Shown in pieces: positions 1,071 to 37,868 of a DNA stretch of 64,000 bases; the stretch's first letter is position 1; every line of letters starts with the position of its first letter. The position numbers and the translations under genes are program-made. The stretch lies in the NCBI GenBank assembly GCA_053919585.1, contig CM132788.1. One strand, given 5' to 3'. The DNA comes from Euprymna scolopes. Taxonomy: Eukaryota. Under the pieces are notes generated by a model. That model was given only the letters and a program-made list of their open reading frames with translations, did no database searches and was not told where the DNA came from.

Positions 1071-1431
1071 TACGTGTCAATTCTGTTTTTAATACTTAAA
1101 TAAAATCAAACGTGTTTCAGTTACTCTTTATTGCTGGCCGAGCGGGTAACGTGTCAGGTTTTTTGCACACTTTATTTTCCACCTTCGCCTCAAGGCTTCG
1201 GGTTCGATCCTAACTACTTACCAAAACTGTTTTTTTTTTTTAAGTATCCCCCCCCCCAACACAAACACCCGGGCAACGATTTTTTTAAAGAAGTTTTAAC
1301 ATTGTTTTTTTTTATATATATAATCTTTAAACAGGGTTGTTACTTCGCTTATTCTTTTGTTTGGATTCCCCCGCCACCGCCCAACACACATACCTCTAAA
1401 CACCCGGGCAACGCCGGGTACCCCCCGCTAG
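1071..1431 (+). mobile_element. Non-autonomous Helitron, 3' part
   Basis: Ends in the hairpin CCCGGGCAACGCCGGG followed by CTAG (1428-1431); similar to the reverse complement of 32219-32410. 5' boundary uncertain. Confidence 0.7.
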
Positions 1432-18261: not shown

Positions 18262-18712
18262 TTTATTTATTTATTTATTTGCAGACTATTATTCTCATCT
18301 TCTAGTAGTTGTTTCACAACGTTTCAGCCAACTATTCTTCTGGCCTTCATCAGGTGGTTAACTGCAACGGGATAGGAACAAAGAATCTCCTAACTGCATC
18401 CTCAGCAATTACTGCCTTCCATAGTTGCCGTCCATTTATCCATTTATTTATTGTGAACTATTATCCTCACCTTCTAGCAGTTGTTTCACAATGTTTTGGC
18501 CAACTAATCCTCTGACCTTCATCAAGTGGTTAACCGCGACGCATCAATAACTATGGAAGGGAGTAATTGCTGAGGATGCAGTTAAGAGATTCGGTGTTCC
18601 TATCCCGTCGAGGTTAACCACCCGAGGAAGGTCAGAGGAATAGTTGGCCGAAATGTCATGAAACAACTACTAGAAGATGAGCATAATAGTCTGCAATAAA
18701 TAAATGGATAAA
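18262..18712. mobile_element. Penelope-like element termini (pseudo-LTRs): two minus copies and one inverted plus copy, each with a minimal hammerhead motif
   Basis: About 18270-18425 is an inverted repeat of about 18549-18705, with a partial extra copy at 18432-18541. Minus strand 18357-18315 reads CCAC CTGATGA A GGCCA..TGGCT GAAA CG TT GTG. Confidence 0.7.
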
Positions 18713-20032
18713 GAAAAATTCTAAGTGAAAAGATTCATTCAGCAAACCAACACTAAGAATGTAAGTCGTTTGTAAATCAAAAAAACTATAATCACTGGAA
18801 CTTTAATTTTTCGACATTATAACAGTAATGATTATCCTTATAATATGACAGATTTCAAAGCACACAAATTATCACCTAAAGCTGGAACACAGTATTTCAA
18901 TTGTAAAAATGTAACTTTATTTGAATTTTTTTATAAAATTTTCAGTTACTTGAGCTTGTTTTCAAAATTATAACATCAAATGGAAATAAAATCAATAGAA
19001 ATTTTTAAGAGAAATTGATCACTAAAATATAAATCAAAGAAAGAAAGAATTATCTTTGGAGAATAACACTTTATTAACATGCTAATAATTCAAATCCTGA
19101 TTTCGGAATCAAAGATTAATCCGGCTTCTTTATGGCCAGTAAGTTTTATGGTCATTGTTGTTTTGGGTTGTTTTTGTTATCAAATTATTTTTTTAATATG
19201 ATTTTGAAAGTTAAATTTAATTAGTACAGTATTGTTTGGTCATTAACTTATTACTTGAATCAAATTGTTATTAAACTAATTTTATTAAGACAATGTTGTT
19301 CAAATTGCTTTAAAAATTATTGGGTGTAAATAGTTCCAAAATATTCAATTTTATAATTAAATGAGGATTTACTACAAATTTTAAAGCCGGAAATGATTTT
19401 CTATTTGACAATCTAAATGCTTCTAAATTTCTTGTAATATATATATTTTTTCAATTTGATCAAAATAACTTCAAAAGATTAAGATGGAGCTTCTTTTCAA
19501 AGAAATTAAAATGCATTACAGGTAATTTAAAATTAAGTCTATGTTTTATTTAATATTTAAAAAAATAATTCTAATTATGTTATTGCACATTTTTTTTTAT
19601 TTCGATAGTTGAATAGTAAATAAAAATAAATAATAATGTGTAAGAGAAACGCAAGAAGTTGTCACATAATTCTATTAATATAACAAATTACAATTGAAAA
19701 CGAGGTGTATCAATTATTTGTATGTGTTCAATATTTGTATATGCATATGTCAAATCTACACACAGGATATTAAAAGTATAAAAACAATGTTAAAACCTAC
19801 AATATTTTTGGATGAAGTTTATAGTTGTTCACTTATTAAGTATAAAAAAAATGTCTTTTTCCCTCCTTTTCACTATTAGATAAGATTGTCAATCACATAC
19901 ACAAAAAAAAATTGGAAAACTTTAAAAAGTATAAGTGAAAAAGAAAAACTAAATATATATATATATATATAGGAGCCTTGACTGCCGTACAAACGGTCGG
20001 GTTTCAATCCTGGCTTGAGGTAGTTGCCTGTC

Positions 20033-20086
20033 TAGCCGCACTGATGAGCTGTGAAACAGCGAAACAGTACTGTATGTGGATGACTA
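20033..20086 (+). ncRNA. Type I hammerhead ribozyme, copy 1 (predicted cleavage after 20074)
   Basis: TAG-CCGCA CTGATGA GCTG(TGAAA)CAGC GAAA CAG(TA)CTG TA^ TGTGG-ATGA-CTA: intact core, stems I to III, GUA cleavage triplet. Confidence 0.92.
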
Positions 20087-20235
20087 TAGTGCTCCTCACC
20101 TTGAGTTGAGCATATTGAGAAGTGAAAAAACGAATTACCATTAGCATATAAGCGACGCTCTTTGTGTAAACAAATCGAGCGGAGGTATTTCAGACGATAT
20201 CAAAAACATCGTTAAACTCACTACTCGTTCAAGCA

Positions 20236-20307
20236 GCCGCCAATAGCGTAATGGTTAGGAGCCTTGACTGCCGTACAAACGGTCGGGTTTCAATCCTGGC
20301 TTGAGGT
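20236..20307 (+). promoter_or_regulatory. tRNA-derived head with Pol III A/B boxes (also 20522-20593; 5'-truncated copy at 19970-20021)
   Basis: 72 nt; A box TAGCGTAATGG (20244-20254), B-box-like GGTTTCAATCC (20286-20296) in T-arm GTCGGG/CCTGGC, anticodon-loop-like CT-GCC-GT. The acceptor stem is broken, so it is not a functional tRNA. Confidence 0.75.
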
Positions 20308-20318
20308 AGTTGCCTGTC

Positions 20319-20372
20319 TAGCCGCACTGATGAGCTGTGAAACAGCGAAACAGTACTGTATGCGGATGACTA
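20319..20372 (+). ncRNA. Type I hammerhead ribozyme, copy 2 (predicted cleavage after 20360)
   Basis: Same as copy 1 but with a fully Watson-Crick stem I, CCGCA/TGCGG. Confidence 0.92.
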
Positions 20373-20604
20373 TAGTGCTCCTCACCTTGAGTTGAGCATA
20401 TTGAGAAGTGAAAAAACGAATTACCATTAGCATATAAGCGACGCTCTTTGTGTAAACAAATCGAGCGGAGGTATTTCAGACGATATCAAAAACATCATTA
20501 AACTCACTACTCGTTCAAGCAGCCGCCAATAGCGTAATGGTTAGGAGCCTTGACTGCCGTACAAACGGTCGGGTTTCAATCCTGGCTTGAGGTAGTTGCC
20601 TGTC

Positions 20605-20653
20605 TAGCCGCACTGATGAGCTGTGAAACAGCGAAACAGTACTGTATGTGGAT

Positions 20654-20658
<5 letters not shown>
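20605..20658 (+). ncRNA. Type I hammerhead ribozyme, copy 3 (predicted cleavage after 20646)
   Basis: Identical to copy 1; the array ends just after stem I. Confidence 0.92.
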
Positions 20659-20697
<39 letters not shown>

Positions 20698-32218: not shown

Positions 32219-33731
32219 CTAGCGGGGGTACCTGGCGTTGCCCAGGTGTTTGTAGGTGTGTGTGGTGTTAAATAAAAAAAGAACCGGGGGGGGGGGGGTA
32301 GGATCGAACCGGAAGCCCTGAGGCAAAGTTTGAAAATAAAATCGGCCAGCCAGAATGAGTTAGTGAAAGATATTTTGAATTTATTTAAGAACCAAATTGA
32401 CAGGTGCGCGGCCGGAAGTCGTCGAGTGTTACGACGCCGATGACAACGACAACGTAGGTTGGTTTGTTATAAGCAAAGTAAAAAAAAGAAAACAACGCTA
32501 ACACTTAAGCAGGAAAAAAAAAAACACAAATAAAACTAACGTAAGGCAAACGAAGGATGAAAACAGACAACGAACGTTACGTGAAAAATGGCTTAAATAA
32601 GCCTGTTTCAATATTAAAATTTAAAAAAATCGGTGGGCACCCGGGTGTTTTTGGGTGTCGCTAAGAATAAGCGAAGTAAAAAAAAAAAAAAAAAAAAGCT
32701 GAAAAACGAACGTTACGTGAAAAATGGCTTAAATAAGCCTGTTTCGATATTAAAATTTTTAAAAATCGGTGGGCACCCGGGTGTTTTTGGGTGTCGCTAA
32801 GAATAAGCGAAGTAAAAAAAAAAAAAAAAAAGCTGAAAAACGAACGTTACGTGAAAAATGGTTTAAATAAGCCTGTTTCGATATTAAAATTTAAAAAAAT
32901 CGGTGGGCACCCGGGTGTTTTTGGGTGTCGCTAAGAATAAGCGAAGTAAAAAAAAAAAAAAAAAAAAAGCTGAAAAACGAACGTTACGTGAAAAATGGCT
33001 TAAATAAGCCTGTTTCGATATTAAAATTTAAAAAAATCGGTGGGCACCCGGGTGTTTTTGGGTGTCGCTAAGAATAAGCAAAGTAAAAAAAATAAGCAAA
33101 GTAAAAAAAAAAAAAAAAAAGCTGAAAAACGAACGTTACGTGAAAAATGGCTTAAATAACACTGATTCAATATTTAAATTTAAAAAAATCGGTGGGCACC
33201 CGGGTGTTTTTGGGTGTCGCTAAGAATAAGCAAAGTAAAAAAAATAAGCAAAGTAAAAAAAAAAAAAAAAGCTGAAAAACGAACGTTACGTGAAAAATGG
33301 CTTAAATAACACTGATTCAATATTTAAATTTAAAAAATCGAAAAAAAAAAAAAAAACCATCTCACACCACGATTCGAACCCAAAATGTTTAGATAATGAA
33401 CCAAGGCCTTAACCAACTGAGCTAACGCGACGTACATGAAATTTGTTCGGTTTTTAAACTATTTAAAGTAAATCAGGTCATGACGTCATCTGACGCATGT
33501 GTAGAACCGGTCGAGAGGGCCGTTTTTGTTGACCCCCCCCCCCCCGGTCGAAAATTGTCGATTTCAGGGTGAAAAAAATGAATGTTTTTGGCCAATTTTT
33601 CGATATTTTTCAAGTGAAGGATGGAGTTACGATATGATACCGAGTTTGTGAATTTTTGTTGTGTGTCGAAAGTTTTTAGCAGACACACAAACATATATAC
33701 ATACATACATTTTCACTTTTATATATATAGA
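32219..33731 (-). mobile_element. Non-autonomous Helitron carrying an internal tandem repeat
   Basis: On the minus strand: A then TCTATATATATAAAAG at 33731, 3' hairpin plus CTAG at 32219-32222. Confidence 0.8.
32570..33340. repeat. Tandem repeat, about 5.5 copies of a 134-152-bp unit
   Basis: ACGAACGTTACGTGAAAAATGG...CGGTGGGCACCCGGGTGTTTTTGGGTGTCGCTAAGAATAAGC plus an A-tract, starting at about 32570, 32706, 32840, 32977, 33129 and 33279. Confidence 0.95.
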
Positions 33732-36882: not shown

Positions 36883-37868
36883 TAACTGGCCTTACCAGGG
36901 ATTGGCCGGGACTGTTTACTTTCATTCAGTCTAATAGTTTGTTACTTTTTTTAATTTGTAGTTAAATAATAAAAAATTAGTTAGTGGAATGTTGGAAATA
37001 TATTTAACAGCTAAAAATAATAAAATAAAAAAGAATAAAATAAATAAATAAAAAAGTGTACATAAAAATCATAAAAGAAATAATTAAAAAAATAAAAACA
37101 CATTAAAATCAACTCCAACGAGAATTATCTAAACGTATTTAAACAATCTTCAAAGACCCCATAAAAAAAAAAAAACAATGGTCACAAAAACTTTAGTTTT
37201 TGCTAAATTAGTGCACATTAAAAGAACTTCCTAAAAATAATAAAAAATGTAATTTAAAGCAACAATTAAAATTCACAATAAAATAAGAGTAATTCAATAA
37301 AAAAAATTACATATAATACATAAGGATTCAGACTATTTCAAATAAATATTTATTCAAACACTGGCAAACGATAATTACTTTCTATTATTTTTGACGGAAG
37401 GTGCATTACACTAGTTTTAAAATAAGTTGTGAAGCTTTCACCAAATTATTTTTTTAATATAGTGACAAAATTAGGAAAATAAATATTAACAAAAAAACAT
37501 ACCTGTAGTTTGTTATTTATTTTTTTTTTTTTAATAAATGACAAAGAATACGTGCTTGTGCACAATAATAATTTTGTATGCAGAATAGGTCTGGTAAAGT
37601 GTAGTTAAAAAATGATCGTTTGTGAAGAAAAAGTGTTTATTTTTGGGAGGTAATGGTAGTTTAGTGGTTAACAATACAGACCGACAACCTCGGTGTCCCA
37701 AGTTCGAATCCAGATCGTTCCATAAAAATCACACTCAAGATGTTGGCAATCTTCATGTGGTCCCTCCTATAAGTACTTGATATCTTTCTAGAAATAATTC
37801 TCATTACAAAAATATTGGAGAAACCAATGCCAACAACAAAATCTTCAGAGGATGCATGTTAAGTAAAT

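What the first reader, a model, noticed from the sequence alone, without database searches (positions are those of the whole stretch)
19970..20660. Young tandem retrozyme: tRNA-derived Pol III promoter fused to an intact hammerhead ribozyme
Seen: a 286-bp unit repeated 2.4 times, almost identical and much more GC/CpG-rich than the flanks. Each unit has a tRNA-like head, a complete type I hammerhead about 12 nt downstream, then further hairpins (TGCTC/GAGCA; CGCTC-TTTGT/ACAAA-GAGCG). Established: the same logic occurs in Schistosoma Sm-alpha repeats, newt satellite 2 and animal non-LTR retrozymes, where multimeric transcripts self-cleave to monomers that can circularise. Inference: a non-coding, self-processing mobile RNA family, possibly undescribed in this lineage, giving 286-nt monomers (20075-20360, 20361-20646). 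I cannot establish novelty without a search.
Basis: partly seen in the sequence, partly recalled or inferred. Interest (0 to 1): 0.92.

Follow-up and report, generated by a model that had tools for sequence, protein, structure and literature searches.

The report
Young hammerhead-ribozyme retroelement array (retrozyme)
This is a very recent insertion of a small non-coding mobile element whose 286-bp units each carry an intact self-cleaving hammerhead ribozyme; it is one of about 34,000 such ribozymes in this 5.9-Gb mollusc genome, a known kind of element (animal retrozyme) in a lineage where I found no published description.

Summary
In detail: 19970-20660 is 2.4 copies of a 286-bp unit (99% identity). 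GC is 0.45 against about 0.2-0.3 in the flanks; CpG o/e is 0.98 against 0.41-0.47. Each unit holds a complete type I hammerhead with cleavage predicted after GUA at 20074, 20360 and 20646.

New here:
- The genome holds 34,482 hammerheads of this exact geometry. Two base pairs are swapped compensatorily between families: helix II C-G/U-A and helix I C-G/G-C.
- Helix III is a 10-nt palindrome. The monomer fold is disfavoured, and two units fold into a double hammerhead.
- All 20 sampled arrays end at the same base, 14 nt past the cleavage site, followed by (TA)n. Their 5' ends vary. This is the signature of 5'-truncated target-primed reverse transcription.
- An abundant Penelope-like element in the same genome ends in (TA)n in the same way, with the two-site "tail" signature. 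It is the likely mobiliser, although it shares no sequence with the unit.

The tRNA-type A and B boxes are present (chance about 1e-3), but no tRNA model matches. Cleavage, circles and Pol III transcription are not shown; poly(A) reads show no ends at the cleavage site.

Verdict: a new member of a known kind (metazoan non-LTR retrozyme, Sm-alpha-like). First-stage notes on other windows of this genome flagged the same and sister families.

The parts
19970..20660 (+). Whole insertion: a 5'-truncated unit (unit positions 182-286), two full 286-bp units, and a terminal 14 nt (unit positions 1-14)
   Evidence: TRF; BLAST of the unit on the locus; sequence
19953..19971 (.). Left (TA)n flank; the 5' junction has TA microhomology with the element
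20657..20697 (.). Right (TA)20 run that directly follows the fixed 3' end ...GGATGACTATA
   Evidence: TRF; the same junction occurs 8,137 times in the genome
20030..20084 (+). Hammerhead 1 (type I): helix I GUC/GAC plus CCGCA/UGUGG, core CUGAUGA, helix II GCUGU/ACAGC, GAAA, palindromic helix III ACAGUACUGU; cleavage predicted between 20074 and 20075
20316..20370 (+). Hammerhead 2; cleavage predicted between 20360 and 20361. This copy has C at 20363, which makes a G-C pair in helix I where the family has G.U
   Evidence: (the T allele is nearly universal in reads)
20602..20656 (+). Hammerhead 3, complete including the 3' strand of helix I; cleavage predicted between 20646 and 20647; the element ends 14 nt later
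20075..20360 (+). Predicted monomer 1 (cleavage site to cleavage site)
20361..20646 (+). Predicted monomer 2
20244..20296 (+). Pol III-type A-box-like (20244-20254, 10/11) and B-box-like (20286-20296, 9/11) pair, 31 nt apart. It recurs at 20530-20582; a B box alone lies at 20000-20010
   Evidence: no tRNA found by ARAGORN or Rfam
20442..20467 (+). Hairpin CGCUC-UUUGU/ACAAA-GAGCG (also at 20156-20181). It lies in the second module that sister families share at 90% or more
   Evidence: fold; read depth peak at 20438-20477
20375..20399 (+). Hairpin GUGCUCCUCA.../...GAGCA (also at 20089-20113)
   Evidence: fold

Best explanation
The array is a recent insertion of a non-autonomous retroelement of the animal 'non-LTR retrozyme' type. 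Each 286-nt unit encodes a canonical type I hammerhead whose helix III is too short to fold alone but is a perfect 10-nt palindrome. Two hammerheads therefore pair into a double hammerhead. Multi-unit transcripts should cut themselves into 286-nt monomers, while a lone monomer, linear or circular, should stay uncut. RNA holding one or more units (a multimer, or a circle copied round and round) is reverse-transcribed at a nick in a (TA)n tract. Synthesis starts at a fixed internal site, the CUAUA that lies 10-14 nt past the cleavage site at the foot of helix I. It stops at variable points, giving a constant 3' end, variable 5' ends and 0.1 to more than 25 units per insertion. The reverse transcriptase and endonuclease most likely come from the abundant Penelope-like element of this genome, which also ends in (TA)n at fixed sites. 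Transcription may be driven by the unit's own A/B boxes (Pol III); with no T4 terminator on the sense strand it would read through the array. Shown: the anatomy, the family, the compensatory changes, the junction signature and the co-resident PLE. Inferred: transcription mode, cleavage, circularisation, the template form and the identity of the mobiliser.
For: Tandem array and intact core. Family: 102 matches at 98-100% on many contigs from only 40 of 894 candidates scored. There are 14,606 plus 19,876 hammerheads of this geometry against 0 reversed-pattern controls. Structural selection: pair 10.2-11.2 is C-G in this family (about 98 of 100 rows) and U-A in the sister families (about 97 of 100 rows). 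The sister 3' strand UGUCG predicted a 5' strand CGGCA, and that was found as the commonest form; this family has CCGCA/UGUGG. The core is unchanged. Dimer logic: the catalytic monomer fold is -11.3 kcal/mol against an MFE of -14.7; two copies cofold at -38.6 as an exact double hammerhead, and a two-hammerhead transcript does the same in its MFE. Retrotransposition: 20 of 20 arrays end ...CAGTACTGTA|TGTGGATGACTA(TA)n, with 5' starts at 17 different unit positions, often with TA microhomology. There are 8,137 exact terminal junctions and 1,536 internal junctions. Subfamily markers are uniform within each array. [quoted passage not shown] Its ends fall at two fixed sites 37 nt apart, and of the 38 ends that could be read, 34 run into TA-rich repeat and 4 continue into the next tandem copy. 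This matches the 'tail' and internal RT initiation shown for a PLE in vitro (PMC11167929) and the reported PLE microsatellite bias (PMC8557442). Animal retrozymes as tandem type I hammerhead repeats, probably PLE-dependent: PMC7229834 and bioRxiv 10.64898/2026.07.22.740005.
Against: No RNA evidence for cleavage: in poly(A) raw reads no ends pile up at 20360/20361, and many reads cross the site into (TA)n. That library would not enrich small non-polyadenylated RNAs, and its strandedness is unknown. Rfam scores the motif below threshold (22.4 bits on the type III model; gathering score 48.5). BLAST finds no similarity between the unit and the PLE loci sampled, unlike the pLTR homology reported in Xenopus. 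So the partner is inferred only from the shared target and junction logic. About 8 of 20 arrays have no TA run on the 5' side, and one (L004), by my reading of the flanks, appears to have a 9-bp direct repeat outside array plus (TA)n. The TA run may therefore partly be a tail made at insertion rather than a pre-existing target. The arrays sampled were the best matches to the query, so youth and uniformity are overstated.
Confidence: 0.72

Rival explanations
1. It is an ordinary tRNA-derived SINE mobilised by a LINE with a (TA)n tail. The hammerhead module is simply the LINE-recognition tail, and tandem arrays arise later by unequal crossing-over.
For: A/B boxes. The copy-number profile falls from the 3' end: about 9,700 hammerhead ends, 4,747 B-box regions, 2,043 A-box regions. 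Most insertions are shorter than one unit. The (TA)n may be a tail (L004 flanks).
Against: 5' ends do not cluster at a Pol III start. Arrays have a partial 5' unit plus whole units, with uniform markers. The only abundant element shown here to end in (TA)n at fixed sites is a PLE. By my own knowledge, hammerheads are a PLE/retrozyme feature and are not known in LINE 3' ends. No LINE partner was sought or found.
Confidence: 0.13
2. It is satellite DNA that spreads and grows at the DNA level (unequal exchange, eccDNA reintegration), and the hammerhead is a passenger relic.
For: Long arrays exist, with at least 25 units at C2:53357432-53364248 and dimer-period arrays. A higher-order A-B-A-B pattern is seen in one array.
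Against: Thousands of dispersed short insertions have one exact 3' end and variable 5' ends. Compensatory changes keep helices I and II paired across families, which a passenger would not show.
Confidence: 0.06
3. The elements are retrotransposed, but the hammerhead's selected role is as a binding or positioning structure for the reverse transcriptase next to the initiation site, not self-cleavage or circle formation.
For: The initiation site sits at the foot of helix I. For the anole PLE, cleavage was not needed for insertion, the ribozyme was protein-assisted, and no cleavage-site read ends were found. No cleavage ends were seen here either.
Against: All 13 catalytic core nucleotides are kept in 34,482 copies. 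A mere scaffold would not need them. The palindromic or near-palindromic helix III kept in three lineages (UA, GU or GA centre) fits dimer catalysis.
Confidence: 0.09

Closest known systems
Metazoan non-LTR retrozymes (Cervera & de la Pena 2020, PMC7229834)
   Same: Short (170-400 bp) tandem repeats. Each has a type I hammerhead, is non-coding, is dispersed in many copies and co-exists with PLEs. The proposed life cycle runs through self-cleaved, ligated circles copied into tandem cDNA.
   Different: The main text and the one supplementary file held as text do not mention cephalopods, A/B boxes or a microsatellite target. Here the 3' end is mapped to a single site 14 nt past the cleavage site and the target or tail is (TA)n. 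RNA circles are not shown here.
Schistosoma Sm-alpha / Sj-alpha SINE-like hammerhead elements
   Same: SINE-like repeats carrying a type I hammerhead in tens of thousands of copies (about 38,500 hammerhead hits in S. mansoni, PMC2770079). By my own knowledge (Ferbeyre et al. 1998, not readable here) they carry a tRNA-type Pol III promoter.
   Different: A different phylum with no sequence relation tested. By my own knowledge the Schistosoma ribozyme has a stable helix III and cleaves as a monomer, whereas this one needs a partner.
Hammerheads of Penelope-like elements, and PLE internal RT initiation (PMC4209133; Frangieh et al. 2024, PMC11167929)
   Same: Type I hammerhead with minimal helix III acting as a dimer. 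Tandem and partial-tandem insertions. Fixed insertion ends set by internal initiation downstream of the ribozyme. AT-rich or (TA)n targets.
   Different: The unit has no ORF and no detectable similarity to the pLTR of the dominant PLE here. That PLE carries only an atypical hammerhead-like motif (CUUGAAGA-A-GCCCG...CGGGC-GAAAC). Here initiation coincides with TA/UAUA microhomology, unlike the non-homologous site reported for the anole PLE.
Newt satellite 2 and ASBVd double hammerheads
   Same: Weak helix III; activity through pairing of two ribozymes in multimeric transcripts (for amphibians; ASBVd from my own knowledge).
   Different: Newt repeats form large satellites and ASBVd is an infectious RNA. 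Here there are thousands of dispersed, 5'-truncated insertions.
tRNA-derived SINEs, including cephalopod Ceph-SINEs
   Same: A/B-box head, short length, high copy number, microsatellite-type 3' end.
   Different: No cloverleaf and no defined 5' end. The Ceph-domain motifs quoted in PMC5786205 are absent from the unit (read against the unit sequence). It has a ribozyme tail and tandem insertions.

Membership tests
Hammerhead ribozyme, type I | Conserved core C3-U4-G5-A6-N7-G8-A9, G12-A13-A14, A15.1-U16.1, cleavage after N-U-H | tested here: met
   CUGAUGA, GAAA, an A-U closing pair and GUA are present in all three copies and in 34,482 genomic copies.
Hammerhead ribozyme, type I | Three helices around the core, helix I open, supported by covariation | tested here: met
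   Helix I has 5+3 bp, helix II 5 bp and helix III 3 bp (10 bp as a dimer). Compensatory C-G/U-A change in helix II and C-G/G-C change in helix I between families.
Hammerhead ribozyme, type I | Rfam curated score | tested here: not met
   No match at gathering score. The best is Hammerhead_3 at 22.4 bits against 48.5, E 0.041, in a register that gives a 1-bp helix I.
Hammerhead ribozyme, type I | Site-specific self-cleavage | tested here: inconclusive
   No read ends at 20360/20361 in one poly(A) library.
Metazoan non-LTR retrozyme | Tandem 170-400 bp non-coding repeats, each with a type I hammerhead, dispersed in the genome | tested here: met
Metazoan non-LTR retrozyme | Expressed as monomeric linear and circular RNAs | tested here: inconclusive
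   The sequence is present in RNA libraries of two organisms. However, reads run into the flanks, and circles cannot be told from tandems with short reads.
Metazoan non-LTR retrozyme | Co-existence with autonomous PLEs | tested here: met
Non-autonomous PLE derivative (Li et al. 2026 preprint) | Sequence homology to a PLE pLTR | tested here: not met
   No BLAST hit of the unit in 34 PLE loci. Only one PLE family was sampled.
Non-autonomous PLE derivative (Li et al. 2026 preprint) | PLE-type insertion signature (fixed internal initiation site, tandem and 5'-truncated copies, AT-rich/(TA)n target) | tested here: met
   searches compared
tRNA-derived SINE | Head recognisably derived from a tRNA | tested here: not met
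   ARAGORN finds none. The Rfam tRNA model has no hit at E<=10 on the 97-nt head.
tRNA-derived SINE | Internal A and B boxes at tRNA-like spacing | tested here: met
   A 10/11, B 9/11, 31 nt apart. There are 0 such pairs in 282 kb of background; about 1e-3 expected per unit. Promoter activity was not tested.
tRNA-derived SINE | Full-length copies begin at the Pol III start site | tested here: not met
   5' ends fall at 17 different unit positions.

The most novel reading that the evidence does not exclude
A currently active superfamily of Pol III-promoted 'retrozyme-SINEs' in a probably decapodiform cephalopod genome. It borrows a (TA)n-specific Penelope-like element without sharing its sequence. 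The only requirements would be a hammerhead fold next to a YAUA initiation site that base-pairs with the nicked (TA)n. That would give a simple, testable rule for how PLE reverse transcriptases choose templates, and would show that the double-hammerhead switch separates multimer processing from circle stability.
Probability: 0.3. Interest if true: 0.65.

Novelty: new member of a known kind. Interest (0 to 1): 0.5.

Why it matters
Animal retrozymes and PLE hammerheads are known, but how they are copied into DNA is still largely hypothesis. This family is so young (several arrays are identical to the consensus) and so numerous that its junctions can be read cleanly. It has one initiation site at the foot of the ribozyme, (TA)n at every 3' end and variable 5' ends. 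A co-resident PLE shows the same end logic. That makes the PLE-retrozyme relationship and the template form (circle or multimer) directly testable. It also points to a large class of repeats that standard annotation probably misses. A recent cuttlefish genome paper reports 'almost no SINEs' in Decapodiformes and does not mention Penelope or hammerheads. That this genome is a decapodiform is my inference from its size, its 46 or more large contigs and the mollusc-labelled runs.

Tried and rejected
- **Rfam type III register:** cleavage at GUC 20318 would leave a 1-bp helix I, so I rejected it in favour of the type I reading.
- **tRNA tests:** ARAGORN and the Rfam tRNA model find no tRNA.
- **Nearby tRNA-like locus:** local alignment of the head to the locus at 33340-33430(-) is not significant (score 19; 91 of 2000 shuffles reach it).
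- **PLE homology:** BLAST of the unit against 34 PLE loci gave no similarity.
- **Per-copy conservation of the core:** uninformative. Only 77 of 13,002 cells are non-consensus, and most of those are subfamily indels.
- **Old copies:** decayed copies in the flanks of L017, L020 and L029 have broken cores, as expected for dead insertions.
- **Target-site duplications:** the automated scan was inconclusive inside (TA)n.
- **Ceph-SINE membership:** rejected, because the quoted Ceph-domain motifs are absent.
- **Helitron:** rejected. Helitrons have a fixed 5' end and a CTRR 3' end (my own knowledge); here the 3' end is fixed and the 5' end varies.
- **Coding potential:** none; every frame of the circularly permuted unit has stops.
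- **Limits:** Sister families and the PLE chimera noted by other first-stage readers could not be examined beyond pattern rows. Read laying is capped at one call, so no second, non-poly(A) library could be laid.

Full report
**Observation**

The region 19970-20660 is a head-to-tail array of a 286-bp unit: 2.4 copies, 99% matches, no indels. It sits between (TA)n runs. It is GC-richer than its surroundings (0.45 against about 0.2-0.3). It has not lost its CpGs (o/e 0.98 against 0.41-0.47 in the flanks). The unit has stop codons in all six frames when read circularly.

**Ribozyme anatomy**

Each unit reads GUC-UAG-CCGCA / CUGAUGA / GCUGU-GAA-ACAGC / GAAA / CAGUACUG-UA | UGUGG-AU-GAC.
- This is a type I hammerhead with every core nucleotide present.
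- Helix I has 5 bp, then an internal loop, then 3 bp.
- Helix II has 5 bp.
- Cleavage is predicted after GUA at 20074, 20360 and 20646.
- A descriptor of the core matches three times against zero in 100 shuffles of the window.

Rfam does not call it. There is nothing at gathering score. The sub-threshold hit is to the type III model (22.4 bits against 48.5) in a register that would leave a 1-bp helix I, which I reject.

Helix III is the problem for the models. As a hairpin it has only 3 bp, but ACAGUACUGU is a perfect palindrome.
- ViennaRNA gives the catalytic monomer fold -11.3 kcal/mol against an MFE of -14.7 that destroys helix III.
- Two copies cofold at -38.6 into an exact double hammerhead.
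- The MFE of a 377-nt transcript with two adjacent ribozymes forms the same double hammerhead.

This is the dimer mode known for newt, ASBVd and PLE hammerheads. It predicts cleavage of multimers but stability of monomers.

**Family and structural selection**

The genome (5.9 Gb) holds the unit at 98-100% identity on many contigs, with 894 first-look candidates. Pattern counts for the hammerhead geometry CTGATGAG-N11-CGAAAC-N6-GTH are:
- 14,606 with C at position 10.2
- 19,876 with another base there
- 0 for the reversed-pattern controls

In this family pair 10.2-11.2 is C-G (about 98 of the 100 rows shown). In the sister families, whose arrays have 321-324-bp periods, it is U-A (about 97 of 100).

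The sister families also have UGUCG instead of UGUGG in the 3' strand of helix I. From that I predicted CGGCA instead of CCGCA in the 5' strand, and that was the commonest form found. Copies can be linked by coordinates, for example C1:10374501 with C1:10374538.

So two pairs change on both sides while the core stays fixed. The centre of helix III is UA, GU or GA in the three lineages, and all three are compatible with an extended intermolecular helix.

Within the young family the test has no power: only 0.6% of cells are non-consensus. Old copies are decayed.

**How it moves**

In 20 independent arrays the 3' end is always ...CAGTACTGTA|TGTGGATGACTA followed by (TA)n. The 5' end falls at 17 different unit positions, often with TA microhomology, and 11-12 of the 20 also have TA repeats on the 5' side. 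Exact 30-mer counts in the genome are:

| 30-mer | count |
|---|---|
| Terminal junction | 8,137 |
| Internal unit-unit junction | 1,536 |
| B-box region | 4,747 |
| A-box region | 2,043 |

Most insertions are therefore shorter than one unit, or belong to relatives that share the 3' module. Some arrays reach 25 or more units.

Subfamily markers are the same in every unit of an array but differ between arrays, and several arrays equal the consensus. This pattern is that of target-primed reverse transcription. It starts at a fixed internal site 10-14 nt past the cleavage site, runs on a template that repeats one unit (a circle or a homogeneous multimer), and truncates at the 5' end. The template cannot be a monomer cleaved at both ends, because the 14 nt beyond the cut are always present.

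**Likely mobiliser**

The genome has 14,709 first-look GIY-YIG candidates; all 150 that were scored pass the Pfam cut-off.
[quoted passage not shown] It has no CX2-5CxxC linker, so it is a Penelope/Poseidon-type PLE.
- Its pLTR carries an atypical hammerhead-like motif.
- Its copies end at either ...TTTATTTCATA or, 37 nt further on, ...CAACAATCATA.
- Of the 38 ends that could be read, 34 run into TA-rich repeat and the other 4 continue into the next ORF.

This matches the PLE 'tail' and two-site internal initiation shown biochemically for an anole PLE, for which cleavage was not needed and no cleavage-site read ends were found. It also matches the microsatellite bias reported for PLEs.

The retrozyme shares the target and the logic (ribozyme, short spacer, YAUA, then (TA)n) but no sequence. 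The PLE partner is therefore an inference, which I put at about 0.6.

**Promoter claim**

TAGCGTAATGG (10 of 11 to the A box) and GGTTTCAATCC (9 of 11 to the B box) lie 31 nt apart. No such pair occurs in 282 kb of other sequence from this genome, and I estimate about 1e-3 per unit by chance. Older copies have the more canonical GGTTCAAT. The sense strand has no T4 run, while the antisense strand has T6 and T5.

Against this, no tRNA is recognised and insertions do not begin at a Pol III start. The boxes are real motifs; their function is untested.

**RNA**

The sequence is in RNA libraries of two organisms and in runs labelled mollusc or invertebrate metagenome. On a permuted monomer most reads are only 90-95% alike, which means they come from sister families. 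Depth peaks on two shared modules: the B-box-to-3'-end module and the 20438-20477 hairpin. No ends pile up at the cleavage site in the poly(A) raw reads, and many reads run into (TA)n. This neither shows nor excludes processing.

**Comparison and novelty**

The element fits the animal non-LTR retrozyme and resembles Sm-alpha. I found no paper that combines retrozymes or hammerheads with cephalopods, apart from a PLE survey. It is a new member of a known kind.

Its unusually clean junction data bear on the open question of how PLEs and retrozymes are copied. First-stage notes on other windows of this genome report the same 286-bp unit, 321-347-nt sister units and a PLE chimera. I confirmed the sister families only through pattern rows.

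Noticed in passing
window 18280-18700 (- strand): Another repeat with an inverted 5' arm and a hammerhead-like motif (CUGAUGA-A-GGCC...GGCU-GAAAC, with an extra A before helix II, as in the PLE motif). It ends in (AAAT)n. Rfam gives only weak miRNA-like hits caused by the inverted repeat.
   Followed up: partly
window 33340-33440 (- strand): tRNA-like element with canonical boxes (TAGCTCAGTTGG ... GGTTCGAATCG) followed by a T16 run. ARAGORN does not call it. The 3' flanking 70-nt segment is duplicated at 33100-33340.
   Followed up: partly
window 1135-1215 and 37657-37720 (+ strand): Two more A-box/B-box pairs at tRNA-like spacing that ARAGORN does not call; possibly heads of other SINE-like families.
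   Followed up: no
L031-L064 (for example L061:5290-5900 - strand): The dominant PLE has two alternative 3' ends 37 nt apart, both followed by (TA)n. Its ATG lies just 3' of the longer end, and its 3' UTR holds three long A runs.
   Followed up: yes
L061:2657-5531: Overlapping stop-free frames of 875 aa (-) and 771 aa (+) next to the PLE. This is probably a low-complexity or repetitive stretch rather than genes.
   Followed up: no
G000:C2:53357432-53364248 and C2:36091569-36096695: A run of 25 consecutive 284-bp-spaced unit junctions, and an array in which exact junctions mostly recur at 570-bp (two-unit) spacing. This suggests later expansion or a dimeric template.
   Followed up: no
G000:C1:11251822-11257651: Sister-family array of about 19 units with a 322-bp period. 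Its hammerhead has helix II GUUGU/ACAAC and a helix III centre GGUC.
   Followed up: partly
run X1 laid on window:20218-20503: Summed contig word depth over the hammerhead module reaches about 1.2 million in a 1.07-Gb run of unrecorded library type. The cause could be very high expression, a small-RNA library or a summing artefact.
   Followed up: no
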